Positions 32,561-60,089 of a stretch of DNA of 64,000 nucleotides are shown here, in pieces. Within the stretch, counting starts at the first letter, position 1. Each line of letters starts with the position of its first letter. A program made the translations under genes and the position numbers. The notes under the pieces were generated by a model. It was not told the origin of the DNA. It saw only the letters and a program-made list of their open reading frames with translations, and searched no databases. Source of the stretch: Callorhinchus milii (lineage: Eukaryota); contig NW_024704798.1 in the NCBI RefSeq assembly GCF_018977255.1, forward strand, positions 248,001-312,000, written 5' to 3'.

Positions 32561-32893
32561 ATTATTTGAGGCTGGTGAATGGCGGCAGCCCGTGTGCCGG
32601 GAGAGTGGAGGTCTACCACGAAGGACAGTGGGGCACAGTGCATGGCTATGGCTCTGGTGGCTATGGTTGGGATATGATGGACGCGGCTGTGGTGTGTAAG
32701 GAGTTGGGCTGTGGAGCCGCGCTGTCAGCATCAGGAGACGCTCACTTTGGCGAAGGCTCAGGTCCCGTTGTGACGTACAATGTTCAGTGCAGAGGGAGTG
32801 AGTCTACTCTGAGGGGTTGTCAGTCAGAGCCCTGGAAGGACTATTCAGTGTACTGGTACTCACACTCCTATGATTCCGGCGTCATCTGCTCAG
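32561..32893 (+). CDS. SRCR domain 1 exon (WC1 domain-1-like, 6 Cys)
   Basis: YLRLVNGGSPCAGRVEVYHEGQWGTVHGYGSGGYGWDMMDAAVVCKELGCG…QCRGSESTLRGC…YSHSYDSGVICS; cag|at and g|gtaaat boundaries. Confidence 0.97.
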
Positions 32894-34336
32894 GTAAATA
32901 ATTTTCAGTCTCCCATCATTTTTTTCAATCCTCATATTTTCGGTAAACCACAGTTTGAGAAACTCTGATAGAGATTGTATTCCACATTGTGTCATATTAT
33001 TATTAAATCTCTAATTTGGAGGGTCACGCTGCACTGCCATAACACCCCCTCCACAACCAACAACGCCCTCCGCCGTCGCTCAATGTTGATTTTCTTTATT
33101 TTCCCTTCATATGCTCAGGAGAGGCTTCAATCATTGATTCAGACTTCTTTTCAAACCGGAACAAATACACATTGAAATCCGCAATGGTTCCTTAGGGTGT
33201 TCCATCCAAGACAGTCCCTCAATCTCTCCGACTTGTGGTTTCCCGGGTTTAATTGGCAAATTGCTGCAAAATATAGGCCGGGCTTATTAATAGTCCTTTC
33301 TTTCTTCATTGTCCTCATTATCTTTTGAGATCCCCATTGCACAACAGGAACTTTCAGACCCTTCCTTATGCTCTCAGGCTCTCACACTCCCATTAGATAG
33401 TAGGAACTGTCTCTTCTCATCCTCTCAGACCTTCTTTGCACCAAAGTTATTGTCCTTCCCTTCCTCACCCTCTCCCACCCCCAGTGCACAGGAAGTGCTA
33501 TCTCTCCTCAACCACGGAGACTCCCATTGCATAGCAGATAGTGCTATTCCTCTGCTGACACTCTCGGTCCCCCATTGCACCTCAGGTATTGTCTCTCCCC
33601 ACCTTCTCAGACCCACATTGCCTCTCAGGTGGTATGTCTCCTAACTCTCTCCGCCTCTTCTTGCACAGTTCCTGCTCACACTCTCAGACCCCATTGAATT
33701 GCAGGAAATGTCATTCCACCCCAGCCACTTCAATACTAATGCACAGCAGCTACTTCTAAATGATTTGGGACGTCATTCTATCCTGCAGTTCGCAGCGTAA
33801 ACTTATCTTGAGTCCTTTCGAAGCAGCGTAAGATATTTGTGGAGAAATTCATGCTACTCAGCACCACAAAAAAAACTTGCATTGATAGGCAGGTAGATTC
33901 GCATGGCGCTTAATCACTACCTCATTCACCTGACAAGTATCTAAATGTACATTACTATCTCTAAATTTCTGATGATTGCTTCAGCTTTCACCTGTTTGCT
34001 GTCTGTAGTTAATCTTTCTGTCAACGTGGAGTCCTGTATCTCAATGGTTAGAGCACTCGCTTTGTGAGCGAGAGACTCGAGTTCAACTCCAGGCAGGTCA
34101 GGGCGAAACCTTGGGCACGTTTCCCTACTCCACACAGAGCCTAACAATTATCCCTCCAAAACCAAAAACAATAATAAATTGGTCATTTTCAATCTGGGAC
34201 TATTTGCGGGACATTGCTGTGCGCAATTGGCTGCCGCGTTCGCGCACAAATATACAGTCAATTCGCTTTATAGTGCGTCCTGTGAATCGCTTTGGGACGT
34301 CCTCCCGACGTGAAAAGCGCTACATCAAATGCAAGG

Positions 34337-34369
<33 letters not shown>

Positions 34370-37300
34370 GGTACGCTCTTTGTATTATAATAACTCATAT
34401 CACGTTAAATCTTCCACTACAGAACATTATCCCCCCAAATTAATTGGTGGAAGCAATGCCTGTTCCGGCAGAGTTCAATTGCAGCGCGATTATAAATCAG
34501 GAACCATCTGCGATCATTATTGGGATTTACAGGACGCCGATGTGCTCTGTCGGCAATTGGATTGTGGCTTCGCTTTGTCAACTGGTTCTGGAACACAGTT
34601 TGGGAAAGAAACAGGTCTTATCTGGAAAACTAACTTCAATTGTGTCGGCGATGAATCCCGAGTGTCGGACTGTCCTGTATCATTCTGGGAGAAGTTCAGC
34701 TGTACAAATGACCATGATGTTACTGTTGTATGTTCCGGTGAGTGAAATAATAATTCTTTCATTTGATACCATTCATTACTAAGTCATTATTATTAAGTCA
34801 TTCTGACGTTCTCAACGCGCTTCAAATAATATAAGTTCATGAAATCTGGCTGCATATTTTGTCGACGGAAAAGCCAACAACTTAAAACATAATAGGACAT
34901 ATTCTTTAAAAGTAAAATCTACCTTTTCTTCAATGATGCGCTGTCTGTCTTAGAAAATCTGATCTATTGTGTGAGTAGGATTTGCGATGAGTTATTATTC
35001 AGGTGTCAGAGGTGACACCAATCTCCATCTCTAAAAATCAGCACAAACCAAATATTAATTTTATTATTGCACACGAGAGCATAGATTCCTGAGACAAAGT
35101 GTTTACTCCTGATTCCCATATTATAGTCTGGTCCTGATGAAGGACAATCTGTGGTTTCAGACTGGGGCGAAGATACTCTTCTGCTCCAAATGCAATGATT
35201 GTTTACAATATTCTCCTTATCTTCACGTTTTTTTTTCCTACTGGCATATGTGGTGATTTGTGTACTTGGGCTGGAGGCTGCTATCATTTTTTGTGTTATT
35301 GTCTGTTGATTATGTGTAGCTGTGAACACCAGTAACATCGTAGTCTGTGAAATGTTCATGTAATTTCTACGTTGCTATGAATATTTCTATGTCATTTTGT
35401 AGGGTATATTGTCACTTTCGAAATGCCTATTTTCAATTATTAACAAGATAAACTTATCTTCAGCTCTCACAGCTTTGATTGTGTAATTGTGCATTGAAAT
35501 CTTTGCAGGTAAACAGTGGCATTTACGGTTAGAGAGCGGTGGGAGCCGCTGTGATGGGCGAGTGGAGATTTATCATAACGGCACTTGGGGCAGATTGCTG
35601 GACGACTCCTGGAATATATCAGATGGCGATGTCATCTGCCGACAGCTGAACTGTGGCTCTGCCATTTCAGTCTACAACTCTTCCCAGTACGGGGAAGGCA
35701 CTGGACCTGTGTGGATCAATAATGTTCAGTGTATGGGAACCGAGACGCACATCTGGAACTGCCCACATTCCACAGTGGCTTCATCCTCCTGGAGCAGCAG
35801 TGATGTGGGAGTTCTTCGTTCGGGTGAGTGCATTTGACCTATAAATAGAAGCAATAATTGCCAAGTTTAATACCAAATTATTAAATCACTTACAATATGC
35901 CTTCCTGTCGGTGATTGTCTGTTACTCCATCGAAGTACAGACGTCCACAATGTCATTGAACTATTCCACACGTAGTGTTGTGAAAGCGCGGCGACAGCAA
36001 ACTGATATTCAGTTGATAATGAAGATTCACACACACTCAACACATTGAGTGACAATTAATATTTTGTTGCTGAATAACATTATAACCAAACGTAGTATTT
36101 GTCACCAATGGAAACCAGTCGTGTTGTGTTATATTGAAATAGATCACATGAAGCTCAGGCTGGTGGATGGTGGCAGTTCCTGCTCTGGAACAGTGGAGGT
36201 TTACCGCCTTGGAAATTGGAGGAGAGTGCGGGATCAGTTCTGGGATTTAAGTGATGCGAATGTGGTTTGCAGACAGATGGGCTGTGGTCCTGCCATGAGA
36301 GCCTATAACTCCCCGGTGCACAGAGAAGGTGAACGGTCCCCATGGCTGAAGGATGTTCGGTGTCAAGGAAATGAGGCAAATCTTTTGAAGTGCAAACCGT
36401 CCAGGCGAAACCAATCAACTGAGAAGATGAGTGATGTTGGAGTTCAGTGTTCCAGTGAGTGAATGATTATTAATGATTAAAATTTCAGTACTGGATTTTA
36501 ACTCGTTGCCGGTTGTTACTCGATTGGCGGAACTTTTCCGCGCGTGAATCATCTCTTCAATAAATACTAAAATAATAATTTGGTCACTCAAACAAAGACC
36601 GTTTGTGGGCCACTGATTTGTGTGATAGGCTGCTGCACTTCCTTCAGAAACCTACTGAATTCAATTTACGTTATATTCTGGGAAGCGCTTTGAGACGTGT
36701 CAAACACCAGAAAATATGTTAAATCAAACGAAATGTCTATTATTAATATTGATCTACAATTTGCATTCGAGTCTCTCCTATTTTGACATGATACCTCAGC
36801 AATGTGCATTGCTATTGCCTGGTTATATTTGACTGAAGGAGATTGGGTAGCCGATTGAAAATCAGCTATAACAGTAAACACTCAGTTCATCTTTTCCTCT
36901 CATCTCTCCTACATTCCTGTCATCATGATAATACACGGTATCAACTGATGCATGTTATGCAATAAATTAAATTTTGCTTTGGTTCAACAGAAGATGTTCA
37001 GATCAGACTGATGGACGGTGGGAGTTCTTGCGCTGGGAGAGTGGAAATTTTATTCAATGGAACCTGGGGGACGGTGTGTGATGACTCCTGGGGATCACTT
37101 GAGGCGGATGTTGTGTGCAAACAGCTCGGATGTGGATCTGCAGTTCATACAACATCTGCGGCCACTTGTGGGCGAGCTTCAGGCCCAGTTTGGTTGGATG
37201 AGGTCAGATGCTCAGGAAAGGAATCAGCTCTCTAGGAATGTCCCTCTTCTCCATGGGGGCAGCATGACTGTGATCACAAAGAAGATGTGAGCATTGTGTG

Positions 37301-40300
37301 TACAGGTAAGAGATTAAACACCTTGTGTTTCACCGTCATTACTTACTGATAGAGTGTCAGCCTGGCTCTGTTATGAGCAATCTCTCCCTTGAGTCAGAGT
37401 GTTGTGGGTTCAAACCCCACATGGCTTATTCATGGATAAATCTGGCAATCTGAAGCAGGATGAAATGTGCCGAGGCTGTCACTGGCTGTTTCTGGGACCA
37501 TAGTTATCTCACAAGCGCTTGGAAGCGGTTTTGGATTTTCTCCTAGTGCCCTGGACAACAATTTTCCTATCGATCATGGTTACTCTATTTGCGGCTTGCG
37601 CTGGTACATTGCTTTCGCTGGATCTGTCTGTATTGTCCGTCACCATAGGTAGAAAAACAGTGTATTTGAGATGTTTCGATTCCATATTGGTCTTTATGAG
37701 AGAAAAATAGTATTATCAATTAAAGTTCTTTGAAACTTCAAATATAATATTACAAATTATTCCAACATGTTTTCCAGCACCAATAAAAGATTTAGTTAAA
37801 AAAAAACTGACTTGCACTAAATTTAAACAATCACAAACTTTAACAAAATCCATCTTTTTGCCGCCAAAGAACACAAGGAGCTGCGGTTGGTAAATGGACA
37901 ACATTCCTGTGAGGGGAGAGTGGAAGTGTTTTACAATGGGACTTGGGGAACTGTTTGCTCGGACTCCATGAGGCGCAAATATGCTGAGGTGATCTGCAAA
38001 CAGTTATATTGCGGAGAAGCTGTGGCTGTTGATGATAGTGGTCGATATGACAGAGGATCTGGACCTATTTGGCTGGACGACATAGTGTGTAATTCACAGG
38101 AATCCTTCCTGTGGCAGTGCTCTTCGCCACCTTGGGGAGAACATGACTGCGATCATACAGACGACTTACGTGTAATTTGTTCAGGTAATGAAATGCTCCT
38201 CAGCTAATGTTTCTGAGTCAATATTTATTGTATTTCTATTTGAAGTATTTCATTGATAAATGTACGTTTAACGCAGAAGAAGCTCCGAAACAAAAGGATC
38301 GCGTAAAACAGTGCACTGGGAGTTCAACTGATCAGCAGCTTCATTTGTCAGGTACTGAATGAAAAAATATGAACAGAAGGAAAATGTGCTCTTATCAAAA
38401 TATTCACAACACAATTTCCAAATTTCCAACGGTATTTCCTGTAATGTGCATCAATTGCATAGAACTAATCCGCGCATTTGGTAACGCGATTTCACGTCTT
38501 CTGGACTTCACAGAAAACACGTGAAAGTGTATCGACGGTGTATTTATAGGCGGCAGCAAATTGTGCACAAACAGTTGTGGATCGAGAGACCAAATTATTA
38601 TAATGATTTATTTTTGAAGGATTATTTACAGGATAATTAAACAGATCCCCTGTAAGTAATGCTTCACGGGAAAAAAATCGCTTGATGACAGTATGGATGA
38701 AAACGTATTTTATGTGTGTGAGTGACTGACATGTGAAATGAATACTGTCTATGGATAAGTCTTCCCGACGTGAAAGGCTCCATAAAAATATAACGTTGTT
38801 GTTGTTGTTGCTGTCTGATCAGGACAGGAGATGCGGTTGGTTGGAGGAAGCAGCATTTGCTCGGGGAGAGTTGAGATACTGAGCAATAACACGTGGGGGA
38901 CGGTGTGTGACGACTCCTGGGATATCCGAGAGGCCAGTGTGGTGTGCGGACAGCTGGACTGCGGCCCGGCCGTGCGGGCTGTGGGACAGGCGGGGTTCGG
39001 ACAAGGCGCTGGTCAGATATGGCTGGACGAGCTTCACTGCAGAGGAAGCGAATCCTTTCTGTGGGATTGTGTCTCCGCATCCGCGGGTCGCAGCGACTGC
39101 GTTCACAAAGAAGACGCCGGTGTGGTTTGCTCCGGTAGGGATCCGATCTCTCAATGTTCATCGACAAATTTGAGGTTTTTAAAATTTTTCTCAACAAAAG
39201 CAGATTAATTCTGACTTCATTTGATGCCAGAAATTGAATGGTTACTGGATTTATGTTGTTTGCGATGTTTTGCAGGTAAACCTCCAAGACCGCCAATCCC
39301 AACCGCATCCTTTGGTAAATAACATAAATACTTGACTTCTTGCTGACACATTGCTTAGCTTTCCCAGATATTACCACCAGGTATTGCCATTCATTCGTAA
39401 TAAAATTAATATATCTAAACCAGTATATTTGTCAACTAACCTTTCAGTAGTCAACACTTGAGAAATGAACAGACTGTATAACTACATTTTAGAAATTAAC
39501 AGGCGTTTAACTTCAGGAAAAGAGCTGCATCAGTACAATTATTGAGATAGTTTGGGCATTATTCTGAGTACACTGTGCAACATATCATACACTGTGCAAT
39601 AATTTGCTTCAGATAACGTTCAGTTTAGTGTGAAGCATTTTTCTTTATAGTTTCGAACGTGTGACTACCACATGTTGTACAACAATAAAATAACAAATGT
39701 TATGTCCTTGATTTGCAAAGTCCAGTTGATCAACATACCTTTCGTGGTCTGCATCGTCCTTGGAATCCTGTTAGCAGTGGTACTATTTGCACTGATTGTA
39801 CAGATGGACAGTAATTCTTCAGGAAGAGGTGAGACAGGACTCTGATCTCACAGCACTGCCTGGAGCTCCGTTATCAATTCAGTTAAAATCCTGTTGATAC
39901 ACGTGTCCCTTTTGTTAACTTAATACTCTTACCTGTTTTTACCGTCTCGATTTCATTGCTGTATTCACATGTATCTGTTAAGTTGCACAAACTAAAATTA
40001 AAAACATTTGCGTTCAAATGCGTAGCTCAAACACAACCACAGATGCAAAAAGAAACCAGCAGACACAATTAGGCCTCAACGTAAACTGAGCGCAATAACA
40101 TATTTTTCATAAAGGATACAAAAACAGAGCAGTTAAACTGACACAAAAACTTAGATACCCAAAGCATCACAAATACACAGTTCTATTAATACACCAACAC
40201 ACAGAGCTAAGCAGATATTTGCAGGTACCTAAATACAAATGCACAGTCATATTTACCGATTGAAACAAACACTTACAAAAACAAGTACACAGATGAATAA

Positions 40301-43300
40301 TGAGGCAATAGTGACGACAATATATTGATATTTTCAAATAATAATACTAATGTAACATGTTCCAAATATTTACACATCAGTTTCAAACTCCACTGTGCAA
40401 TTTCAGGTTAATATTTTAATTTCTGTACATGTCAACTTCCAACAGAGGAAAAGTATCCGTCTGTTCGTTGGTGTCAAGCAGTTTATGAAGAAATTGAGGA
40501 ACGGCCGATCAGAAGTAGAAAGTTTGAGTCTGGCTCCTCTGGTACATACTTTGCAATCATGTTTATTGTATCCGCATCATTGTACAAAAAACATCAGCAT
40601 TAGTATCCCGATTGGTAGCAAATGCAAATGATTGAATGCGCTGTGGATAGGATTTCAAGGTTTTATTCAGAGAACTGAAAAAGCCAAATCTTGTTGCCTT
40701 GTATCAATTTACCCACTTAATAGAGGTGAAACCTACTCAATACTTCAATTTGTTCGGTCTTTCAATATTCAAATATTATCACCGATGATTTCAGCATTGA
40801 CCAATCGAACTTAGTTATAACAGTTAATTTAATACAAAGTAAAATAACTGTTAGATAGTGGGTTTTATAACTTCACCAAAACGAATCCTACAGAAATTAA
40901 TATAAGCGATGCTTATTGTGGTTCTGTAGTCCCAACGAATATCTAAAATCATACCTTGTTGTCAAATGTGTAATCTTTAGCCTGAACAGAGGAAGTATTC
41001 AAAGATCATGTTAATAATATTTAACCAACATTTGACCAAGATTACATTGTTGAGCGGTTGACCATATATTAATCACTCATTAAGAGTGATCCACGATTTT
41101 TGCAAAAAAAACTCATATTTTGGTATCTTTCTGTATTTTGATATAGCTATAGAATTAGACTCTAAGAAACACCGTAACTGGACAGTAATGACATTATTTG
41201 CTCAGTTTCAGGATCCAACGATTCTATCAGTAAACTGGAGTACTACACTGGGGAGAGTGTGAATGGATCTGATGCAGAACAAGGAAACGCTGAGGTGTTT
41301 CTTCCGAATGGCGATGGTGAGTGTGCGAAATAATTATTGTATTTTATTCAGCCTCTGATCAATTCGACGAAACATTTCAAAGCACTTCACATATGTTTAC
41401 AGTGATTTATAGTGATTGGTTATCTGTTGATGAACCTCAAAGGCAATTTGTGCGCAAAATATGCACAGTAATCAGGAGGAATGTGGGGCAACCCTCCAGT
41501 ATAAGAACTATTTCCCTTTTGAGATTTGCAATATTTAAATTCCAAATATACATCCAAACGGAGCTCAATGCACTGCACTCCCCCAGTACTGCTGTGGAGT
41601 GTTATCCAGAGTGTGATCTTAGTCCCCGAGTGGATTACAATCAGAAACTTCTGACCCAGAGGCTAAAGAGCTCTCAATTTATCCAGTTTTCACTGGAAGT
41701 CAAGCTTTAATCTTCAGATAAAGTATCTAAAAAGAAATTCAGGATGTTTTCAGTAGTTCAGGCATAAGATACCTTGAGCACCACTGTGTCCAAATTTGGG
41801 TGGATATGGATAGACATTTGTGGAAGACAATGTTGCAGGGCTGTGGGGAGAGCGCGGAGGAGTTGGAGTAATTTTGGTCACTCTTTCAATAGATGAACTG
41901 AATGGCCTCCTTCTCTGCTGTATAATATTATGTTATCTGCCTCCTTTTCCCATCTGAATGTTTGAGTGCGTAAGACTGACTTCCTGTTAACAGATCATCT
42001 TCAGGAAGATTACGACGACGCTGAGGGCGGAACCTTCCAGATGGCGGACCGGGGCCTCCTCCTGGTCACTGACACACACCCTGATGTCCCCGCACTGACC
42101 AGTCACACTGTCCAGGAAGCCTCGCTCTGTCAGGGTAAGAGCCGAACTGTCATGTCTTAACCTACCGCCGGAGATATTTAATCAGCAACACATCTGGGAG
42201 TGAAAATCATCATCACAGTTGCAATTATCATCAATCTTCCATTCCATACAGAAATGCAATGGCATAAAGACAACAGGAATTACAATTGTGCAGTGCCTTT
42301 CAAGTTAGGACGTCTCGGACAGGCTTCAATGTGTAGTGACTGTATGTGTAGGCGAGTTGGTACGTGTTTGCAGCAAGGGATTGGTAATAGGGCGGCTGGA
42401 GATATTTGGCCTCGCTGTGATATCTAAAATCAGAATAATTACGGGTCGATGTGCAATCTGAAATGGATATTTCAGGGTTTGATGAATTCATCTCCGAGGC
42501 GCTCTGTAACGCCAATAATTGCACATACAGAATGGTGCTCTGTGCAGTGTGAATAACTGCACATATAAAATGGTGCTGTGACTTACCGATTAACGCAGAT
42601 TTCCTTGTTTCGACGTCTTGTTAATAACAATCAAGATGCAATGAAGGAAATAATCGTTTACAGCACTATCAGCAATTATTGAAACGCACGTTTAAAAAAT
42701 TTATAATCTATTTAAAATTTAACAAGTGAGGAGCAATTCCATCTTGAATGCCCAACCCTTCCAGTTTTTTTAAAATGCTGATTGTAGTAATGGAGGTAAG
42801 ACACACAATCAGAAATCCAAGATGGTTATCTCCAAATCGGTATTTTTCACTCACACATAAACACACAGATACACACGCAGAGACCCACAGACATACATAA
42901 CATACCTATGTACACACAGACACAAACGCAGCACATAAACGATCATAGACAGACACAGGCACACACAAACAGACACACACCGAGACACACAACACACAGA
43001 CACTCACAGACAGATAGGCACACACAGGCAAACACACAGACAACACACATAGACACACAGACTCACACATATACAGACACACAAATGCAGACGCAGACAC
43101 ACACTTACAGATACACAGTGACACCTTTCTGAATGTAATTACTAATAAATGATGGTTTTCTCTGCAGAGGGTGGACACCACACAGACAGTGACCCGCTGT
43201 TTCCTGTTGACACCAGTCAGTGTGGTTATGATTACGATTATATTGACTGTGAGAATGACACCGAGAAGAACAGACAACTTCCCGTCGGGAATCAAAGGGA

Positions 43301-43325
43301 AGATCCTGAGCTCTGCAACGTCTGA
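32561..43325 (+). CDS. WC1/CD163L1/SCART-like group B scavenger receptor gene: 7 SRCR + hinge + TM + 4 cytoplasmic exons; premature stop in SRCR5
   Basis: 13 exons with canonical ag/gt boundaries, all phase 1, splicing in frame to a terminal TGA at 43323-43325. Confidence 0.93.
34026..34368 (+). mobile_element. Full-length SINE in the SRCR1-SRCR2 intron
   Basis: tRNA head, Deu-like core, long (ATT)n tail. Confidence 0.9.
34423..34737 (+). CDS. SRCR domain 2 exon
   Basis: HYPPKLIGGSNACSGRVQL…[23 protein letters not shown]…FNCVGDESRVSDC…VVCS; 315 nt, phase 1-1. Confidence 0.96.
35509..35823 (+). CDS. SRCR domain 3 exon (terminal Cys replaced by Arg)
   Basis: [23 protein letters not shown]…VICRQLNCG…VGVLRS; CGT at 35817-35819. 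Confidence 0.96.
36143..36454 (+). CDS. SRCR domain 4 exon
   Basis: MKLRLVDGGSSCSGTVEVY…WDLSDANVVCRQMGCG…VRCQGNE…VGVQCS; 312 nt. Confidence 0.96.
36991..37305 (+). CDS. SRCR domain 5 exon with in-frame TAG at 37233-37235
   Basis: [30 protein letters not shown]…KESAL*ECPSSPWGQHDCDHKEDVSIVCT; the stop sits at the conserved Trp. Confidence 0.95.
37870..38184 (+). CDS. SRCR domain 6 exon
   Basis: [30 protein letters not shown]…HDCDHTDDLRVICS; 315 nt. Confidence 0.96.
38823..39134 (+). CDS. SRCR domain 7 exon
   Basis: [30 protein letters not shown]…DCVHKEDAGVVCS; 312 nt. Confidence 0.96.
39276..39314 (+). CDS. Pro-rich hinge mini-exon (GKPPRPPIPTASF)
   Basis: tttgcag| acceptor, 39 nt, then |gtaaat; in frame. 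Confidence 0.8.
39721..39828 (+). CDS. Transmembrane exon (…IPFVVCIVLGILLAVVLFALIVQMDSNSSGR)
   Basis: Hydrophobic ~23 aa; 108 nt; g|gtgaga donor. Confidence 0.92.
40446..40541 (+). CDS. Cytoplasmic exon 1 (EEKYPSVRWCQAVYEEIEERPIRSRKFESGSS)
   Basis: aacag| acceptor, 96 nt, g|gtacat; AVYEEI motif. Confidence 0.85.
41212..41316 (+). CDS. Cytoplasmic exon 2 (GSNDSISKLEYYTGESVNGSDAEQGNAEVFLPNGD)
   Basis: tttcag| acceptor, 105 nt, g|gtgagt. Confidence 0.85.
41770..41930 (+). mobile_element. CR1 LINE 3' end fragment
   Basis: gggctgtggggagagcgcggaggagttggagt…gaactgaatggcctccttctctgctgta resembles the chondrichthyan CR1 3' terminus. Confidence 0.6.
41994..42134 (+). CDS. Cytoplasmic exon 3 (DHLQEDYDDAEGG…EASLCQ)
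   Basis: ttaacag| acceptor, 141 nt, g|gtaaga; EDYDDAE motif. Confidence 0.9.
42840..43120 (+). repeat. AC/ACAG-rich simple repeat
   Basis: Degenerate (acacagac)n. Confidence 0.85.
43168..43325 (+). CDS. Terminal cytoplasmic exon (EGGHHTDSDPLFPVDTSQCGYDYDYIDCENDTEK…ELCNV*)
   Basis: ctctgcag| acceptor, in-frame TGA; YDYI motif. Confidence 0.85.
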
Positions 43326-48191: not shown

Positions 48192-49662
48192 AGAGACATA
48201 CAGAGAAAAAAAGAGTTGGACTGACTGCGAAAGCTAAAGCGACAGATTATCAAGAGAGTTCACATAAATTTATGTTGTTTGGCACAGGCTGCGCCCTGCA
48301 GTTTCTGGTGCATCGCTGAAGGTTCTGGATGTGGAGCTTGAAATACATTCCGTTCTAATTAATGTATTTACATCTGATGTCCGAACACATTGTAACCTGC
48401 TTTAAGCCCACTGTGTTAGTGTGTATGTGAGAGAGAAAGAGACGGGGATGGCGGTTTGGGGGGATATCATTCATGGGGGGTGGGGGTGAAGTGGTAGGAG
48501 TTTGGGGGACGAGAACTGCTGGAGCAGATTCTGCAGAGGCAGATCATACATAGAGATAAAAACAAAAGATTTTAGTCGACACGGACGACACCACATAATT
48601 TCTGGTGCTTTGCAGGTGGACCTGTGTATGTAGTTGAAGTCAATAGCGGCCAAATTAACATATTAGATCGAGTTATCTCAATGCACTATTACTACAACTA
48701 GAATTATGTCAAATAACGCACATAATGTAGCAGCAAAGAACAAAATATATAGCGCCAAATAGAAAACTTTCGAGCGTTTCTGTGCTACAATTACAGGCCT
48801 CTCAAACACTGTAGATCAAAGCTATGTGAGATTTGAAACTCAGGCGACAATGTGCTCACATGTATGTCGGGTTCACATCCACATATGTTTACCCACCAGA
48901 GCGAACTCATCTGAACAAATATCTGATTGCACATATTAGGCCTATTCTACCGGTTAGTGGCGAATTAACACTAATTCAAATGGTTATAATATTTACTTAA
49001 TTTGGTTTAACATTGCTCTCACATGGCCCTCGATAGTAGCTACAATTAAAATGACTTTTTATTGCAATTTTCCCTCTTCAGACTGGGATGTACTAATATT
49101 TAAACCGAACTACACGAAAAACAACTAGTAAGCAGTGGTGCTCAGACCCATATCATTGTATTCATTACCCTGATCGTTGTCAATGGGTTTACACTATTCG
49201 CCAAAATATTTCTTGCCTTCATTTGTCCGTACAGACAATAACTTTAATTCGAACACCAAGCGAAGGTCAATGCTCTCTGAATAACAATCAAAGTCACTGT
49301 AAAACAGGACTGGTCCACCTATTATCATAATGTTCATTGGATTTGATATAGCACATTATCAAATCTTCGGGACATCACGATGTGCTTCACAGAGTATACT
49401 GTAAAATAATATAGAATATTCTGTAAATATTTAGAAACATTTCGTAAATAAAGCAGGATGTTTGTACTGTTGTGCTTTACCGGCCCAGAACTTTCGTTCG
49501 CTTCGAGTAATAAAGAGTTAACTAAAGAGATCCCCAGACCTGCTATCTTGTCGGCTTTTGACAACATTACAATCAGATAAGAAAGCCTGTCTCCACTCTG
49601 CAGTACCTCGGGTGGCCACAGGGGAGCAGATATTTCCGCACTTCAATATGAAAGATCAGCTG

Positions 49663-50391
49663 TAATAATAATAATAATCCTTGCATTTGATATAGTGCTT
49701 TTCACGTCGGAGGACGTCCCAAAGTGCTTCACAGAACACACTCTAAAGTGAATTGACTGTATATTTGTGGGCGAACGCGGCAGCCAATTGCGCACAGCAA
49801 TGTCCCACAAACAGTCGCGGATTGAGAATGACCGATTTATTATTGTTTTTGGTTTTGGAGGGATTATTATTAGGCTCTGTGTGGAGTAAGGAAAATTGCC
49901 CAAGGTTTCGCCCTCTGCCTGGAATTGAACTCAGGTCTCTCGCTTGCAAAGCGAGTGCTTTAAATACTGAGCTACAGGACTCCACAAATAAGATAAGAAA
50001 GCCTGTCTCCACTCTGCAGTACCTCGGGTACAGGGGAACAGATATTTCCGCACTTCAATATGAAAGATCAGCTGGTAATAATAATAATAATCCTTGCATT
50101 TGATATAGCGCTTTTCACGTCGGCTGGACGTCCCAAAGCGCTTCACAGAACACACTGTAAAGTGAATTGACTGTGTATATTGTGGGCGAACGCGGCAGCC
50201 GATTGCGCACAGTAATGTCCCACAAACAGTCGTGGATTGAAAATGACCAATTTATTATTCTTTTTGGTTTTGGAGGGTTTATTATTAGGCTCTGTGTGGA
50301 GTAAGGAAACTTGCCCAAGGTTTCGCCCTCTGCCTGGAATTGAACTCAGGTCTCTCGCTTGCAAAGAGAGTGCTCTCACCACTGAGCTACA
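49663..50391 (-). mobile_element. Two SINEs (49663-49985, 50076-50391), each preceded by a copy of the same ~85-88-bp flank (49575-49662, 49991-50075)
   Basis: agataagaaagcctgtctccactctgcagtacctcgggt…gaaagatcagctg occurs twice, each abutting a SINE tail. Confidence 0.9.
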
Positions 50392-52329
50392 CTGATAAAC
50401 TGCAAGGTAGGAAACTGGCAGATAATTACGTGCAAATTAATTTAACTGATGTGAAATCTAAAATAATTTTCACTTCGTCAAGGTGAATTGATGCAGATTA
50501 TTAAATTAGAAATTTTGAGGAACACCCTTTAAGATTGTAGATTTAATAATAGCTTTAACAAAATAAGATATTTTTACTTTTGTCAGAAGGGTATGCAAAC
50601 TTTGACGGAACCAATCCACTTTCATAAAATAATTCAAGTCAAAATGCTAAAATACGAAACAAAAACATATAACATTATACAGAGATATGAGTTATGACGT
50701 TACGTGGACAAAATGAAACCATAGCTGAGACAAATTCCTTTTTCCTGATCCGAGAGCAATCCGTAAATATCTGGAACAGGAACATAAAAAGACTGTGGCG
50801 GAAATGGTTGGAGAATGGGATGAAACCGATTGCAACCATTATTGAAGAAAGTCTTTCATACAAGCACGGTTGTCAATAACACCAAAGGGTTGATCATAGC
50901 CACCGGGTGATCAAAGCCTCCATCATATACCAGGCGATCATTGCCACCATTTAGTGGATGATCATAGCTTCGTTCATGCCTTGAAATGCCTCTGCGGTTT
51001 TAGCCCAGACCGACCTGCCCAAACTCCTGACACCCTATGAACTGATCCGATTCTTCCCTTTGCCTTTTCAATGTCCGCTGCCCTGCACTGCCCGTCACGC
51101 CAATGGGCCTTCAGGCTATCTGCCCCCACTCTCTGGTATCACATCCCAGAGACCATTTGCCTCCCCACTCTGTAAGTGACCTTTGTAAAATGATTTACAA
51201 TCATCGACAAATATAGTTTGCCTTCATTTGTCCATATCAGCAATAAGTTCCATTCAAATTTCAAGCGAATATCATTATTAATTGAAATTTTCATCCTGGC
51301 TGTGTAAGTGACGCTCTTTTACGCCTCTGATTTAGAATATTTTGGGTTGAAGTGCAAACAGATTGTTGGAAATGGTCAATGCCATAATGTCCGAATGGTT
51401 TATAATGGTGTATATGTAGGACTGGAAACTGATATTCCCTCGACGGTCACCCAGCTGCAGTGATTGGGAAGAGCTGCCTTGTCAGAATTTCTGAGATTTC
51501 TGAGATGCCCGCTAAGCATATATTGGGCAATTTAATAATAATAGTAATCCTGGCATTTGATATAGCGCTTTTCACGTCTTCTAGACGTCTGAAAGCGCTT
51601 AACGGAATACACTGCAAAGTGAATTTCTGAATGAAACGTTTATCATTATTCTAAGGTACTGTTCCAAAGTTAAAGGAGTTTAACCTTCCTTTTTCCAACC
51701 TCCCACTAAATTTGTCACTCCCTCTACTGCTGTGTGTGGTACATTGCTGCACAAAACATGGTTAGAAAAAGAACACTTTACATTATATCCCGTCCAGCAC
51801 TCTGAGGCACTCTGTGCTGATGTTGTGACCCCCTTAATCGATGAAAAATGGCTATTGAAAGCAGGATCAAATACAATACCCTGCAATGCTACCTTGACGG
51901 CCTTTGAGAACACAACAATCAGACAAGAAAGCCATTCTCCAGCCTGCAATATCTTTGTTGACCACAGAAAGAGAATCTGTCTTTTCCGCCTTCAAGGATC
52001 TGTCCTATCCTAGTTTCACTCGTACCTATTCTAGCATTACTTTTTAAGCCTTTCAAATGGCTCCTTCTGCTGTTTGAAAACACGCACGAGCGGTGCTCTT
52101 CAGAAATTCATCCTTGGCCCTTTTCTCTTCACTGTCTAAAATTCCCCACTGAGCAATATAATACACAGACAGGTGGTGCACCTCCACAAGCTAATGACAC
52201 AAAATTGCCTTCGTCAGCTCCACCGTTGAGTCCACCTGCTGTTTTGACCGAATGATTATCAGCAACTAAGTATTGCAACATCTGGCAGTTTATTTAATGT
52301 ATATTTACCACAAAAAGATTGCTATTGTA

Positions 52330-53545
52330 CAATTGGTTTTGCTTATGCCTGAAACGGGTCTGGTCTCCGTGTACAAAATCAGAGAGAGCTCTCTGTATAT
52401 CAAGACTGGTCTCTTTACAACAGGTCTGTTTCCTGTATAAAAGGCCTGACCTCTTATAGCAGCTCTACCTCTATCTCTATTTTGTTTCAGGTTCCAGCAT
52501 CTGCAGGTATTGTGTTTGGTTCTGGTCTCTGTATAACTTGCCTCGTCCATGTATGTTCTCTGATAGTAGGCCTGGTCTCTGTACAATAAGCCTGGTTGCT
52601 GTAAAAAAAAATCTGTTCTCTGCATAGTTGAGTCCTGTAGCTCAGTTGTTAGAGTACTCGCTTTGCAAGTGATAGACCCGAGTTCAATTCCAAGCAGGGC
52701 ACAACGATGGACAAGTTTCCTTACTCCACACGCCTATTAATAATCCCTCCAAAACCATAAACAATAATAAAATTGGTCATTTTCAATCTACGACTGTTTG
52801 TGGGACATTGCTATGCACAATTAACTGCCGCGTTTGCCCACAAATATACAGTCAATTCACTTTACAGTGTGTTCTGTGAAGCGCTTTGGGATGTCCTCCC
52901 GACGTGAAAAGCGCTATATCAAATGCGAGGATTATCATTATTATGACTATTATTATTATAACAGAATTTTTCTCTGCATGACAGGCCTGGTTACTCTATA
53001 ACTAGCTGATTATCTACACAACAGGCCTGATCTCAGCAAAACAACCCTGGCCTCTGTATAAATTGTCTCTTCCCTGTAAAACCAGCCTCGTCCCTATACA
53101 GCACGCATTTTCTCTGAATCACAAGCTGGGTTAATATGTAACAGGCCTGTTCTTTGTATAACAGACATGGTCGCACTATAACAGGCCTGGTCTCTATATA
53201 ACATGCTAGTCCCTGCTTCAAAGGCCTGGTCTATTTATAACAGGCCTGGGTCTCTGTACAGCAGGTCTGGTCTCTACATAACAGGCCTAGTCTCTGTCTA
53301 ACAGATCTGTTCTCTGTATAGCACGTCCGTTATCTGTATATCAAGCTTGGTTTCGGTTTATCAGGCCTGTTTGTGTATAGCAGGCCGTGTCTCTTATAAC
53401 AGGCCTTGTCTCCGTATTACAAGGTCTAGTTCTGTAGAACACACCTGGCTCTGTATCACAGGCCTTCTGTCTGTATTACAGGCCTGGTCGCTGTATAACA
53501 GGCCTGATCTACATACAACAAGCTTGGTCTCTGTATAGACCTGTT
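52330..53545 (+). repeat. Degenerate ~20-22-bp minisatellite (acaggcctggtctctgtata) interrupted by a full-length SINE at 52630-52959
   Basis: Recurrent aggcctggtctct motif on both sides of the SINE. Confidence 0.8.
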
Positions 53546-55109: not shown

Positions 55110-55815
55110 TGCGAATCAAACGAGATTGAGCGAAATCGGCTTCAGGGTTGGAGTAACCTCTACAGCTTTGCTCAGTCGGTATCGGTAGAATCAATAGCCG
55201 CTCAGCGATGTAAATTAGTTACTGTCCAAAGCCACTTGTCCCCCTTCTGTCTTGGTCACTGAAGGCACCGTATGGGTAATGGAATCTCCTCAGGTCAGTC
55301 CTGAAAACAAGTTTAAAATAAAAATAACAGATTTTATCAATAAACAATACTGGCATTTGATACAGCGCCTTACGAAGTCTTCCAGACATCCCATAGAGCT
55401 TCACAGAATACACTGTAAAGTGAGTTGAATACATTTTGCATTCGAAACGCTGCAGCCAATTGCGCAAACCAGTGTCTCACAAACAAGTCATGGATTAAGT
55501 GATCAATTTATCATGAATTGTTTTTGAAGACATTATTGAACCTGAAATGCGAACCGCCTTTTTAGTCGATAGAATAACAATCAGGTTCATTATGCTGTGC
55601 ATGGAGTGAGAAAACGTGCCCAATATTTTGCCCTACAGGTAGTCAACATGGGTTTCTCGCTTGCGGGGTGTGCGCTCTGAACACTGAGCTACATGACTCC
55701 ACTGATAAAAGCTATGCAATCAATGTTGAGCATTGTCTGAAACTTTGGCGATTGGCCTTATTTGATTAACTATCATTAAATCAGCGAGGGCCAACACGAT
55801 CATAATTCCTCCCAT
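55110..55815 (-). pseudogene. TCR Vdelta-like pseudogene 3: leader MGGIMIVLALADLMI (55770-55815, donor damaged), V exon from 55300, 3'-truncated, no RSS
   Basis: GLT*GDSITHTVPSVTKTEGGQVALDSN*FTSLSGY*FYRYR… aligns to pseudogene 2; decayed SINE in the leader-V intron. Confidence 0.85.
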
Positions 55816-56724: not shown

Positions 56725-56763
56725 AGTTATTGTACGAGGCTGTGACTGTTTCCCATCACTGTG
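56725..56763 (-). promoter_or_regulatory. 23-RSS of V pseudogene 2
   Basis: CACAGTG + 23 bp (atgggaaacagtcacagcctcgt) + ACAATAACT. Confidence 0.92.
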
Positions 56764-57565
56764 GGGCTGAACACACATTAATACACAGCGCGTCAGACAG
56801 CTGTAACTGGGAGATGGTTAATTTACTGGATTTTTTGGAGATCTGCAGCTCATCCGAGAAACGAGATTCAGCAAAATTCTCTTTATGTTCATAGGTATGT
56901 GTACACCTCTGTAGGATATACTCGGGTTGTGCCTCTGAGAGATGTCGGTACCAGTATAAGCAATACACCCTCAGTGATGTATGATAAATGCTGTCCAAAG
57001 TCACTTGTCCTCCTTCTGCCTCAGTCACTGAAGATTGCGACTGAGCTACAGAATCTCCCCGGGTCAGACCTGAAACACAAGCGAAAAATAAAAATGAACA
57101 GATTTTTTTAAAAAACCTTGCATTTGTTATTCTTATGTCTTATCGACGTTTCACAACACTTCACAGAATATACTGTGAAGTGAATTGAATGTATATTTTG
57201 TGAAAAAAGCCTGACAGCCAATTGCGCAAAGTAGTGTTTCACAAACAGCGCAGATTAAAATACTAATTTATTATTTTTTTCTTGGAAGAATTATTCCACC
57301 TGATCAAACGATCCACCAATTGGCTGACAAACGGTTCGTATAATTTCTGAGTGGAGTAATTCAAGAAGCCCAATGTTTCGCCCTGAGGGGAATCGAACTC
57401 TGATCTCTCGCTTGCGAGGTGAGCACTCTATATGCTGATCTACAAGATTCCACCAATAAAAGCCATGCAATCAATTTTGAACATTGGCTTAAAGTTTAGT
57501 TATTTGCCTTAATTGATCACCTGGTAGTAAAACAGCCAGAATCACCCAGATCACAATTCCCCCAT
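56764..57565 (-). pseudogene. TCR Vdelta-like pseudogene 2: leader 57521-57565 (45 nt, frameshifted), V exon 56764-57069
   Basis: GLTRGDSVAQSQSSVTEAEGGQVTLDSIY…LYWYRH…SKLTISQLQLSD. First Cys replaced by Ser (AGC); 1-nt deletion and TAA in the D.AVYYC motif. Confidence 0.92.
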
Positions 57566-58577: not shown

Positions 58578-58884
58578 GTGTAGTCTGACAGTAATACTCT
58601 GTGTCTGATGGCACATAATGTTTGGTGTCAGATAGAGCCAATGGGAACACAGCTACAGTGGATCTCTTCCTTCTCGTGCACAGATTTGGCATGTGTTGTA
58701 AATTCAGCACGGAAAGTGTCCCATCATAATCATGTCTCGTCGTGTACAGAGGAAGCTCCCCTGGATACCGACTCTACTAGAACATTAAAAAAATTCGTGA
58801 AATCAGCAGAGTATCTGCAGCTCAGGTTTGCAGTCTGTCCTTCGGTAGCAGACACTTTCATCTGTGATGGTTCACTCGCTGTCC
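58578..58884 (-). pseudogene. TCR V pseudogene 1 (alpha/delta-like)
   Basis: GTASEPSQMKVSATEGQTANLSCRYS…; frameshift in a T7 run; WY codons read TAG TAG; ends TEYYC. Heptamer-like CACAGAA without a good nonamer. Confidence 0.8.
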
Positions 58885-60050
58885 CTATAGCCAGAGAGAA
58901 TATATTATTCACTGTCACGCAGAGGCCTGAGGTAAATCCCCAAATTTTTTTCGGGTTGAGAGGGATATATTTACACATCACGCCCAATAACAGTGAATTT
59001 AACACGCAAAATATTTAACAGCACAAATGTGCTGCCGTGTTATCCTACAAAGCACATAGCAACTCAACTTTACCGTCAAACTATGTGAAGAGCTTTAAGT
59101 TATACTCCAAACCGGAATATATGTAAGGACTATTGTTCCTTCATCAACAAGATTTATTTTCTCTGCTGGATTGTCAAAAAAATCAACCTTGTGTTCTAAC
59201 GTAGGTCAAGTAACCCACAATTCTGCCTCAAACCCCATATATTTCTATATTCCAGTTGTCCATTCAATGCCATTTCAAATCAGCGATTATGTTGACTTCA
59301 GCTGCTGCAAGTAATGTAATTGCAATCATTGCGTTTGATGGAATGATTGAATATTTTCAACTTTAGTGCACAGCAGCGTGTTACAAATAATCGTGGATTG
59401 AGTAGCAAAACTTATATTTGCCAACAATTCTTGCAGGGGTCATTACCCCAGAAATTAATCCGACAGTCGACCAACAACCGCGTTCCTGCTTACTGCAAGC
59501 AAAAGAGAGACGCGAGTATTGAGTAAAGAAACTTGTCCAACTTTTCGACTGCCTGGGAATCGAACCCAAGTCCTCTCACTCACCACTGAGGTACAATTCT
59601 CCACTGAGATCAACATATCAACTTAAAAAAATGTGTTAAAATGTATGTCGCATCATTTTAAGTGCTCACTCTTACAATCAAAAGTATTGGCTGCTTTATA
59701 TTTACTACAAAGTATACTGTCAATTCAGTTTACAGGATATTCTGTGAAGCGCTTTGAGACGTCTCAATGATGTGCTGCAGCGGAAAATCAAACGTAGGGA
59801 TAACTCTATTTGTTATTGTGTTGCTACAACTGTTACTTTCAACATGTCTAATTTCCAACGAACACTTATCACAATCTAATACCTGTCGGTGAAAAATATC
59901 TTAAACATTCAGCAAGAAGTGTATCACATATTTTATTTCACGTCATATGAACTCAATCATGTGAAAGCTATGATAGCAGATTGGAAAAGGTTTGTTACAC
60001 TGTCTGTCACTAACTGTACTGCACTGTTTCGCAGCTTTGGTTGTGATGAG

Positions 60051-60089
60051 GGTTATTGTACGAGGCTTCCTAAGATGTGTATCACTGTG
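60051..60089 (-). promoter_or_regulatory. 23-RSS of the supporting Vdelta
   Basis: CACAGTG + 23 bp (atacacatcttaggaagcctcgt) + ACAATAACC. Confidence 0.95.

What the first reader, a model, noticed from the sequence alone, without database searches (positions are those of the whole stretch)
32561..60089. A gamma-delta co-receptor-like gene lies in the path of V(D)J deletion: possible rearrangement-gated loss of a WC1-like receptor
Seen: the supporting Vdelta and pseudogene-2 RSSs point toward lower coordinates, and the SRCR gene lies on that side in the opposite orientation. Inference: if Ddelta/Jdelta/Cdelta lie beyond the left edge in the same orientation as the Vs, any rearrangement using this NAR-TCR cassette (or a V further right) excises the whole SRCR gene from that allele, while Vs left of it would keep it. 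Receptor dosage would then be tied to V choice, a somatic genetic switch coupling TCR type to co-receptor. If D/J/C are inverted, the gene would instead be flipped next to new enhancers. I do not know of this being described, but could not search.
Basis: inference. Interest (0 to 1): 0.85.

Follow-up and report, generated by a model that had tools for sequence, protein, structure and literature searches.

The report
WC1-like receptor gene beside NAR-TCR V segments
In elephant-shark-type DNA, one copy of a multi-copy WC1/SCART-like scavenger-receptor gene (this copy has a premature stop) sits 13-17 kb downstream of T-cell-receptor V segments, so V(D)J joining would probably delete it as a bystander; a regulatory switch is unproven.

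Summary
On the minus strand there is a complete NAR-TCR cassette: leader, NAR V, D, J, then a leaderless supporting V-delta. Three V relics follow it. Two consensus 23-bp-spacer RSSs point to lower coordinates (2 hits; 0.05 expected by chance).

On the plus strand, 32561-43325, lies a 13-exon type I receptor gene with 7 SRCR exons, an interdomain exon, a TM exon and a tail carrying AVYEEI and LEYYTG. The tail and domain order match shark orthologues and bird/turtle 'antigen WC1.1-like' proteins, so 'WC1/SCART-like' is supported.

- This copy has an in-frame TAG in SRCR exon 5 and has lost a structural cysteine.
- It is one of at least seven about 80-93% identical segmental copies in Callorhinchus milii. 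One paralogue carries the same V fragment downstream.
- No D, J or C element is in the window, and I could not place the window on the assembly. Whether the gene lies between these Vs and D-J-C is therefore untested.

Passenger genes inside antigen-receptor loci are already known (trypsinogens in TRB). The most likely reading is a bystander gene in a duplicated V-region block. The switch idea remains an interesting minority possibility.

The parts
32561..32893 (+). SRCR exon 1 (D1; lacks the C2/C7 cysteine pair, as in its paralogues)
   Evidence: Pfam SRCR E 3e-26. AG/GT borders, 333 nt. The acceptor TGCAG|AT is conserved in all paralogues.
34423..34737 (+). SRCR exon 2 (D2, 8 cysteines)
35509..35823 (+). 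SRCR exon 3 (D3). The last cysteine is replaced by Arg (DVGVLRS; all six fetched paralogue proteins have DVGVLCS or DVGVVCS).
36143..36454 (+). SRCR exon 4 (D4; a tandem relative of D3, absent from paralogue L002)
36991..37305 (+). SRCR exon 5 (D5) carrying the in-frame stop
   Evidence: Four paralogue proteins read ESALWEC and a fifth ESALSEC, where the window reads ESAL*EC.
37233..37235 (+). In-frame TAG (Trp codon in four of the fetched paralogue proteins). It is the only internal stop of the 931-codon reading frame, at residue 506.
37870..38184 (+). SRCR exon 6 (D6)
38277..38351 (+). Interdomain (ID) linker exon, EEAPKQKDRVKQCTGSSTDQQLHLS
   Evidence: tblastn to P0009/P0015. In frame.
38823..39134 (+). 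SRCR exon 7 (D7, membrane-proximal)
   Evidence: Pfam E 3e-31. 98-99% identical to paralogues.
39276..39314 (+). Proline-rich stalk exon (KPPRPPIPTASF)
39721..39828 (+). Transmembrane exon (VQLINIPFVVCIVLGILLAVVLFALIVQMDSNSSGR)
40446..40541 (+). Cytoplasmic exon with the AVYEEI tyrosine motif
   Evidence: The motif definition is in PMC2906472.
41212..41316 (+). Cytoplasmic exon with LEYYTG
43168..43325 (+). Last coding exon (GYDYDYID...; stop codon at its end)
62349..62391 (-). NAR-TCR leader exon (MPLLCISISFLFLQ, GT donor)
   Evidence: Read from the sequence.
61665..61947 (-). NAR-TCR V exon. It has Cys in the a-b loop and no Trp in the WYRK position.
   Evidence: Pfam V-set. The features match PMC1845163. 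Its paralogues are all from C. milii.
61626..61664 (-). RSS of the NAR V (CACAATG, 22-24 bp spacer, A-rich nonamer)
61231..61301 (-). NAR-TCR D element (about 61272-61259) flanked by 12/13-bp-spacer RSSs
   Evidence: The 5' heptamer is weak (GAATGTG).
60825..60917 (-). NAR-TCR J: 23-RSS (60917-60879), then J coding 60878-60825 (FKEYTEDGSPTKVTVTK), followed by a GT donor
60090..60391 (-). Supporting V-delta exon. It has no leader, has an AG acceptor in phase with the J, and has Cys in CDR1.
   Evidence: Pfam V-set E 1e-14. Its C. milii paralogues are 83-93% identical.
60051..60089 (-). 23-RSS of the supporting V-delta (CACAGTG ... ACAATAACC)
58600..58890 (-). V pseudogene 1 (frameshifted, no usable RSS)
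56764..57069 (-). V pseudogene 2. Its leader (57565-57521) has a stop at codon 5. Its 3' end is frameshifted, with a TAA where YYC is expected.
   Evidence: Compared with P0132.
56725..56763 (-). 23-RSS of V pseudogene 2
55164..55301 (-). Truncated V fragment, a duplicate of the 5' half of pseudogene 2. The same fragment lies downstream of the paralogous SRCR gene in L004.

Best explanation
The window is a piece of the NAR-TCR / V-delta region of Callorhinchus milii (elephant shark) or a very close relative. It holds two kinds of gene on opposite strands.

(1) On the minus strand there is an apparently functional NAR-TCR cassette: leader, NAR V with a 23-RSS, a D flanked by 12-RSSs, a J with a 23-RSS, then a splice into a leaderless supporting V-delta with a 23-RSS. 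Three V relics follow it.

(2) On the plus strand there is one member of a multi-copy family of type I receptors of the WC1 / CD163c-alpha (SCART) kind. It has 7 SRCR domains, an interdomain linker after the sixth, a stalk, a TM segment, and a tail with the YEEI-type tyrosine motif that in cattle WC1 is needed for co-receptor signalling.

The SRCR gene and its flanks form a segmental duplication unit of about 45 kb or more, present at least seven times. The copies exchange exons by gene conversion and evolved under purifying selection. The copy in this window now has a TGG->TAG stop in SRCR exon 5 and a Cys->Arg loss in D3. It is therefore probably a recently disabled copy, or a null allele; skipping the in-frame exon 5 could rescue it.

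Inferred, not shown: if this V block lies upstream of D-delta/J-delta/C-delta in the usual translocon orientation, joining from the supporting V-delta, or from any V further right, excises the SRCR gene on that chromosome. That would be a mechanical by-product, as for trypsinogen genes in TRB. With many paralogues elsewhere, it would have little or no effect on receptor supply.

Species and family:
- The best hits are C. milii paralogues at 59-69% overall, and up to 98-99% for single exons.
- NCBI names several of them 'antigen WC1.1-like' or 'M130-like'.

Tail homology:
- BLASTP gives E 5e-13 to a tortoise M130-like protein, 3e-6 to a flamingo WC1.1-like protein and 1e-11 to a sevengill shark orthologue. 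The alignments cover the TM segment, AVYEEI and LxYYTG.
- The Y-(Q/E)-(D/C/E)-(I/L) motif and the ID exon are family traits of WC1/CD163c-alpha; CD163A and CD163b tails are unrelated (PMC2906472).

Domain order:
- It is collinear with shark orthologues.

Duplication unit:
- Window 5.9-52.8 kb is collinear with L002 at about 92%, and also with L003, L004, L005, L008 and L001.
- L004 carries the same V fragment downstream.

Selection and gene conversion:
- dN/dS is 0.31-0.39, and the nearest paralogue differs from exon to exon.

Lesions in this copy:
-.

NAR-TCR features:
- They match the published description.
- The two 23-RSSs are significant: 2 found against 0.05 expected.

Precedent:
- Non-TR genes lie inside a TR locus in cattle, human and mouse (PMC2685407).
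Against: - The position of D-J-C relative to the window is unknown, so 'in the deletion path' is unproven.
- Three of the four V-type elements next to the gene are dead. That fits a decaying or orphan V cluster as well as an active one.
- No signal-peptide exon was found for the SRCR gene, so the 5' end of the gene model is incomplete.
- No expression data were available.
- The TAG could be a sequencing error or a polymorphism, in which case the gene would be intact.
- dN/dS of about 0.35 shows the copy was functional until recently.
- 'Bystander' is a default reading. It has not been shown.
Confidence: 0.6

Rival explanations
1. WC1-like co-receptor genes are deliberately interleaved with V-delta / NAR-TCR cassettes. 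V choice (or V-alpha to J-alpha deletion in alpha-beta cells) then somatically removes a defined subset of them. This couples TCR type or lineage to the co-receptor repertoire.
For: - The geometry is right if D-J-C are to the left.
- The gene family really is WC1/SCART-like, with a conserved signalling tail.
- The SRCR gene and the V fragment were duplicated together at least twice: in the window and in L004.
- The family is under purifying selection.
- CD163-like SRCR receptors mark tcrg/tcrd-positive T cells even in cod (PMC9276791).
- How stable, variegated WC1 gene choice is set in thymocytes is unresolved in cattle (PMC5949365).
Against: - This copy has a premature stop.
- There are at least six other copies, and the stretches fetched around five of them show no V.
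- Shark and ray orthologues have no V within the gene or within 10 kb of it, so the adjacency is not shown to be conserved.
- Deletion affects one chromosome only, and the excised circle persists for a while.
- There are no expression data.
- The known embedded genes (trypsinogens) have no lymphocyte role.
Confidence: 0.07
2. Orphan or relic V cluster. The V segments here are passengers of SRCR-block segmental duplications and lie outside the working TCR-delta translocon (on another scaffold or chromosome, or too far away). They never join to D-J-C, and the SRCR gene is never excised.
For: - Three of the four V-type elements are pseudogenes or fragments.
- The paralogous blocks lie on at least six separate unplaced scaffolds.
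- There is no D/J/C within 32 kb to the left.
- The left flank is only tandemly repeated SRCR-upstream sequence.
Against: - The NAR-TCR cassette is complete. Its reading frames, splice sites and all five RSSs are intact, and its V-delta RSS is near consensus with a spacer conserved among paralogues.
- Cartilaginous-fish TCR alpha/delta loci are described as translocons in which NARTCR V segments are mapped alongside the other V segments (PMC12227049).
Confidence: 0.2
3. Inversional use. D-J-C lie to the right of the window, or to the left in the opposite orientation, as for the inverted V-delta downstream of C-delta in mammals. Joining would then invert the intervening DNA rather than delete it. 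The SRCR gene would be either untouched or flipped.
For: - Inverted V-delta segments are a regular feature of TRA/TRD loci (general knowledge of TRDV3 in human and TRDV5 in mouse).
- About 3.4 kb inverted repeats (74% identity) flank the SRCR gene at 1-2737 / 14095-16708 versus 48300-51754. This shows the region has undergone inversions.
Against: Most V segments in every described TCR alpha/delta translocon share the orientation of D-J-C. Nothing in the window indicates a nearby C region.
Confidence: 0.08

Closest known systems
WC1 / CD163c-alpha (SCART1/2) group B SRCR co-receptors of gamma-delta T cells (cattle, pig, mouse, chicken, platypus)
   Same: - Each SRCR domain is encoded by one exon.
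- There is an interdomain exon after the sixth domain.
- It is a type I TM protein.
- The tail has a Y-E-E-I motif of the Y-(Q/E)-(D/C/E)-(I/L) type.
- It belongs to a multigene family with gene conversion.
- The tail is alignable to bird and turtle 'WC1.1-like' proteins.
   Different: - It has 7 SRCR domains rather than the 11 of WC1 (6 in short forms) or about 8 of SCART.
- It comes from a chimaera, and I found no description of this family in cartilaginous fish.
[quoted passage not shown]
- This copy has a premature stop.
- It sits next to TCR V segments, which is not the case for mammalian WC1 (cattle chromosome 5; PMC2906472).
Trypsinogen genes embedded in the TCR beta locus
   Same: A non-antigen-receptor multigene family is interspersed in a rearranging locus and duplicated together with V segments. 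Any copies lying between a used V and D-J are lost on rearrangement.
   Different: - The trypsinogens have no lymphocyte function, whereas this family belongs to a lymphocyte co-receptor class.
- The position relative to D-J-C is documented for trypsinogens but not for this gene.
TRD locus nested in TRA (delta deletion by V-alpha to J-alpha joining)
   Same: This is the one accepted case where V(D)J deletion of an embedded gene has a lineage consequence: the cell loses the delta chain.
   Different: What is deleted there is itself an antigen-receptor gene. No consequence has been shown for the SRCR gene.
NAR-TCR doubly rearranging cassettes of sharks and elephant shark (Criscitiello 2006; Venkatesh 2007)
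   Same: All the published hallmarks are present:
- a leader on the NAR V;
- Cys in the a-b loop;
- no Trp in the WYRK position;
- its own D and J;
- a leaderless supporting V-delta with Cys in CDR1 and its own RSS.
   Different: Nothing material differs. This is another germline copy of a known family (83-93% identical to other C. milii copies).

Membership tests
WC1 / CD163c-alpha (SCART) subfamily of group B SRCR receptors | Tandem group B SRCR domains, one exon each | tested here: met
   There are 7 exons of 312-333 nt, all phase 1-1 with AG/GT borders, and each matches Pfam SRCR at E 1e-24 to 1e-31.
WC1 / CD163c-alpha (SCART) subfamily of group B SRCR receptors | Separate interdomain (ID) exon within the SRCR array | tested here: met
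   A 75-nt exon at 38277-38351 lies between D6 and D7. It is in frame and shared with P0009/P0015. The trait is described in PMC2906472.
WC1 / CD163c-alpha (SCART) subfamily of group B SRCR receptors | Transmembrane segment plus a cytoplasmic tail with a Y-(Q/E)-(D/C/E)-(I/L) motif | tested here: met
   The TM exon is at 39721-39828, and AVYEEI lies in exon 40446-40541. The motif rule is from PMC2906472.
WC1 / CD163c-alpha (SCART) subfamily of group B SRCR receptors | Tail homologous to named WC1-like proteins, not to CD163A/b or DMBT1 | tested here: met
   BLASTP of the 155-aa TM+tail gives E 5e-13 (P0101, tortoise), 3e-6 (P0097, flamingo 'antigen WC1.1-like') and 1e-11 (P0052, shark). No mammalian WC1 reference sequence was available for comparison.
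WC1 / CD163c-alpha (SCART) subfamily of group B SRCR receptors | Domain-type order a1-b-c-d-e-d' | tested here: inconclusive
   The order is clearly collinear with shark orthologues P0077/P0052. With bird and turtle WC1.1-like proteins it is only roughly collinear (D1 maps to the first domain; D5, D6 and D7 map to the last three). The bovine domain types could not be assigned without reference sequences.
WC1 / CD163c-alpha (SCART) subfamily of group B SRCR receptors | Intact reading frame and signal peptide | tested here: not met
   There is an in-frame TAG at 37233-37235 and a Cys->Arg change at the end of D3. No convincing leader exon was found. The window copy is therefore at best a variant, and probably a pseudogene, of the family.
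WC1 / CD163c-alpha (SCART) subfamily of group B SRCR receptors | [quoted passage not shown] | not testable with these tools
   No transcript data were available. The only evidence is by analogy (PMC2906472, PMC9276791).
NAR-TCR cassette | NAR V with a leader, Cys in the a-b loop and no Trp of WYRK, plus its own RSS, D and J | tested here: met
   The criteria are from PMC1845163.
NAR-TCR cassette | Supporting V-delta without a leader, with a splice acceptor in phase with the NAR J, Cys in CDR1, and a 3' RSS | tested here: met
   The acceptor is at 60392/60391, the sequence QYSGFCGQDF is present, and the 23-RSS lies at 60089-60051.
Gene embedded in the V(D)J deletion interval of an antigen-receptor locus | Lies between a usable V RSS and the D/J/C cluster on the same chromosome, with V and D-J-C in the same orientation | tested here: inconclusive
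   The gene is on the RSS side of the Vs. No J motif, D/J-type RSS or Ig-domain exon exists elsewhere in the window, and the window could not be placed on an assembly.

The most novel reading that the evidence does not exclude
In chimaeras a WC1/SCART-like co-receptor multigene family is interleaved with V-delta / NAR-TCR cassettes. Each V(D)J deletion, and above all the large V-alpha to J-alpha deletions of alpha-beta cells, would then permanently remove a V-dependent subset of co-receptor genes. This would hard-wire a link between TCR type or lineage and the SRCR co-receptor repertoire.
Probability: 0.07. Interest if true: 0.85.

Novelty: new member of a known kind. Interest (0 to 1): 0.45.

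Why it matters
- If the linkage is confirmed, it would place a WC1/SCART-type gene family, with its YEEI signalling tail already in place, inside or beside the TCR delta V region of one of the oldest jawed-vertebrate lineages.
- That would push the origin of this gamma-delta co-receptor family back to the base of the gnathostomes.
- It would add a new element to the 'antigen-receptor complex' linkage picture of cartilaginous fish.
- It would also offer a natural test of whether somatic deletion can shape expression of a variegated receptor family. How WC1 gene choice is fixed is still open in cattle (PMC5949365).
- As it stands, the safer reading is a bystander gene like the trypsinogens in TRB. 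This particular copy is probably dead.

Tried and rejected
(1) Placing the window on a genome.
- Exact-protein look-ups are the only route to the assembly, and they work only for annotated products.
- None of the three homology searches returned a protein encoded by the window.
- The V hits are UniRef-only and have no contigs.

(2) Looking for D/J/C in the window.
- I ran an FGXG J-motif scan, J-oriented RSS scans and a Pfam scan of 140 non-redundant flank ORFs.
- Nothing was found apart from the NAR-TCR's own D and J.

(3) RSS-like CACAGAG-22-CCAAAAACA hits.
- I rejected these. They lie inside tRNA-Ala-derived SINEs.

(4) The 'MLLVMLLAD' start codon used by NCBI models of the paralogues.
- I first suspected that the window's 1-nt difference here was a second lesion.
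- I rejected this. The ATG is absent or out of frame in several paralogues too, so it is only the pyrimidine tract of the acceptor.

(5) Search for a leader exon.
- No credible candidate was found.

(6) Testing whether V adjacency is conserved in elasmobranchs.
- The Heptranchias and Hemitrygon orthologue loci (65 and 102 kb) contain no V or RSS.
- The white-shark protein was not on record.
- Table S1 of PMC12227049, which holds the TCR coordinates, is not held.

(7) Word-seeded search restricted to the tail.
- It found only C. milii paralogues.
- Cross-species tail homology was shown by pairwise BLASTP instead.

(8) The paralogue loci L001-L003, L005 and L008 stop short of the V region. They neither support nor contradict co-duplication of the Vs.
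Full report
WHAT IS THERE

The window is vertebrate DNA with one 30-N gap at 25998-26027. Every close protein hit is from Callorhinchus milii. The window is collinear, at about 80-93% DNA identity, with several unplaced scaffolds of assembly GCA_018977255.1. It is therefore elephant shark, or a very close relative, and it is a paralogue of those scaffolds rather than identical to any of them.

THE V SIDE (MINUS STRAND)

Reading 62.4 kb to 55.1 kb on the minus strand gives a textbook NAR-TCR cassette:
- A leader exon at 62391-62349.
- A NAR V exon at 61947-61665, with Cys in the a-b loop and no Trp in the WYRK position. It ends in CACAATG with a 22-24 bp spacer and an A-rich nonamer.
- A 14-nt D element at about 61272-61259, between 12/13-bp-spacer RSSs.
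- A J at 60878-60825 (FKEYTEDGSPTKVTVTK), preceded by a 23-RSS and followed by GTAAGT.
- A leaderless supporting V-delta exon at 60391-60090. Its acceptor is in phase with the J, it has the CDR1 cysteine, and it ends in CACAGTG-23-ACAATAACC at 60089-60051.

These are the features published for elephant-shark NAR-TcR (PMC1845163).

Three V relics lie downstream of the cassette:
- A frameshifted V without a usable RSS, at about 58890-58600.
- Pseudo-V2 at 57069-56764. Its leader has a stop at codon 5. Its 3' end is frameshifted, with a TAA where its relative P0132 has YYC. It keeps a good 23-RSS at 56763-56725.
- A truncated duplicate of pseudo-V2 at 55301-55164.

The consensus 23-RSS pattern, allowing up to 2 mismatches, occurs exactly twice in the window. 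Both hits are at these V ends on the minus strand, against 0.05 expected from shuffles. The other RSS-like hits lie inside tRNA-Ala-derived SINEs and are spurious.

THE SRCR GENE (PLUS STRAND)

Seven SRCR exons span 32561-39134. All have AG/GT borders, are phase 1-1 and match Pfam SRCR at E 1e-24 to 1e-31. tblastn with C. milii paralogues found six further exons:
- A 75-nt interdomain exon between D6 and D7.
- A proline-rich stalk exon.
- A TM exon.
- Three cytoplasmic exons, ending in a stop codon at 43323-43325.

The spliced frame is 931 codons.

The tail carries AVYEEI, LEYYTG and a GYDYDYID stretch. The same TM, xAxYEEI and LxYYTG layout is seen in shark and ray orthologues and in bird and turtle proteins that NCBI calls 'antigen WC1.1-like' or 'M130-like'. 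Pairwise BLASTP of the 155-aa TM+tail gives E 5e-13 (tortoise), 3e-6 (flamingo) and 1e-11 (sevengill shark).

Herzig et al. (PMC2906472) define this feature. WC1 and CD163c-alpha/SCART share a Y-(Q/E)-(D/C/E)-(I/L) motif, and its phosphorylation is required for WC1 co-receptor activity. They also share an interdomain exon. The tails of CD163A and CD163b are unrelated.

The domain order is collinear with the shark orthologues, and D3 and D4 both map to one shark domain. Against bird WC1.1-like proteins it is only roughly collinear. The DMBT1-like names in the first hit list are automatic labels based on SRCR repeats. The TM and tail argue for the WC1/SCART branch. Function on gamma-delta T cells is untested here. 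By analogy, a CD163-like SRCR gene marks tcrg/tcrd-positive T cells in cod (PMC9276791).

STATE OF THIS COPY

There is one internal stop: TAG at 37233-37235 in SRCR exon 5. Four of the fetched paralogue proteins have Trp at this position (ESALWEC) and a fifth has Ser (ESALSEC). The last cysteine of D3 is Arg, where the fetched paralogue proteins have Cys. Everything else is intact, including all 26 splice borders and the tail.

dN/dS against five paralogues is 0.31-0.39. The nearest paralogue changes from exon to exon, which indicates gene conversion. The copy was therefore functional until recently. It is now a young pseudogene, a null allele or a sequencing error. Exon 5 is 315 nt and phase 1-1, so skipping it would keep the reading frame.

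No leader exon was found. The 'MLLVML' start used in NCBI models of the paralogues is not conserved in frame among the copies. It is just the acceptor's pyrimidine tract, so its state in the window is not a lesion.

A DUPLICATED BLOCK

The SRCR gene and its flanks recur on scaffolds MU249865.1, MU249903.1, MU249898.1, MU249882.1, WEZY01001621.1 and WEZY01002678.1. All are collinear with the window over the stretches that could be fetched. Only L004 (MU249882.1) reaches far enough downstream, and it carries the same minus-strand V fragment. The SRCR-plus-V arrangement is therefore neither an assembly accident nor unique to the window.

The left 32 kb of the window is tandemly repeated SRCR-upstream sequence, in 7-14 kb units at 96-98% identity. 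It includes a 3.4-kb segment that is an inverted 74% copy of sequence found downstream of the gene.

THE DELETION CLAIM

On the minus strand the order is NAR-TCR cassette, V relics, SRCR gene (antisense), then the left flank. If D-delta/J-delta/C-delta lie further left on the minus strand, deletional joining from either RSS excises the whole SRCR gene.

That condition could not be checked. The window has no FGXG-type J, no D/J-oriented RSS other than the NAR-TCR's own, and no Ig-domain ORF in any flank. No protein encoded by the window is in the collections, so I could not obtain the window's coordinates. Cartilaginous-fish TCR alpha/delta loci are reported to be translocons, and NARTCR V segments are mapped alongside the other V segments (PMC12227049). 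That makes the condition plausible, perhaps somewhat better than even, but it is not shown.

The shark and ray orthologue loci show no V within the gene or within 10 kb of it. Adjacency is therefore not demonstrated outside the chimaera.

HOW IT MOST LIKELY WORKS

Shown:
- A complete NAR-TCR/V-delta cassette faces a WC1/SCART-like gene.
- That gene is one disabled member of a constrained, gene-converting multigene family.
- The block containing it was duplicated as a unit.

Inferred:
- Rearrangement of this V, or of more distal Vs, would delete the gene on that chromosome as a mechanical by-product.
- With many paralogues, a second chromosome and a stop codon in this copy, a dosage effect from losing it is unlikely.

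The closest precedent is the trypsinogen family inside TRB. It is conserved in cattle, human and mouse (PMC2685407) and has no lymphocyte role. The one accepted case where such a deletion matters is TRD nested within TRA.

It becomes more interesting at the family level: if SRCR paralogues alternate with V cassettes along the array, V choice or alpha rearrangement would prune the co-receptor gene set. I give that about 7%.

NOVELTY AND SCORE

The NAR-TCR cassette is already known. The SRCR gene is a new member of the WC1/CD163c-alpha kind. I found no paper in the searchable library describing this family in cartilaginous fish. Its position next to TCR V segments is a new instance of the known 'embedded passenger gene' situation. 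Interest is 0.45. The linkage and the deep conservation of the YEEI tail are worth a comparative immunologist's attention. However, the headline mechanism is untested, is conditional on unseen sequence, and is undermined for this particular copy.

Noticed in passing
window 4841-4911, 11854-11924, 18817-18887, 30033-30093, 34030-34101, 43341-43412, 49915-49977, 50331-50391, 52631-52702: There are nine tRNA-Ala-derived SINE heads. One begins about 16 bp after the SRCR stop codon. Their bodies contain CACAGAG-22-CCAAAAACA, which mimics a 23-RSS and could mislead RSS scans.
   Followed up: partly
window 46209-47671 (also 45267-45694): A G+C-rich minisatellite of 52 bp x 28 and another of 20 bp x 21 lie between the SRCR gene and the Vs. 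Both are conserved in paralogues L002 and L004. Two-copy versions of the 52-mer occur in inverted orientation in the left repeats (3797-3899, 10814-10916, 17775-17877).
   Followed up: no
window 1-2737 and 14095-16708 versus 48300-51754: An inverted repeat of about 3.4 kb (72-75% identity) flanks the SRCR gene about 31 kb apart. It could have mediated an inversion that set the gene antisense to the Vs. Paralogue L003 has the same element downstream of its gene.
   Followed up: partly
window 89-23621: The region upstream of the SRCR gene is tandemly duplicated in 7-14 kb units at 96-98% identity, with a further 4-kb repeat at 22096-30060. The only N gap (25998-26027) lies inside this repeat, so the copy number here may be uncertain in the assembly.
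   Followed up: partly
window 36143-36454; L002 (no counterpart): SRCR exon content differs between paralogues. D4 and the interdomain exon are missing from L002/P0015, which instead has a short extra SRCR after D1. D2 is missing from P0013 and P0029. The nearest paralogue also changes exon by exon. Together this suggests exon-level gene conversion and shuffling in the family.
   Followed up: partly
window 57069-56764; protein P0132: The V family of pseudo-V2 lacks the canonical first cysteine (VDLESNY / VTLDSIY) even in its intact relative P0132. It carries a Cys just before the conserved Trp instead (DYCLHWYR). This is an unusual V-domain disulfide layout.
   Followed up: no
window 60917-60879 and 61626-61664: The NAR-TCR V and J both carry 23-bp-spacer RSSs, and the D carries 12/13-bp spacers on both sides. 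This is an IgH-like 23/12-12/23 arrangement inside a TCR locus.
   Followed up: partly
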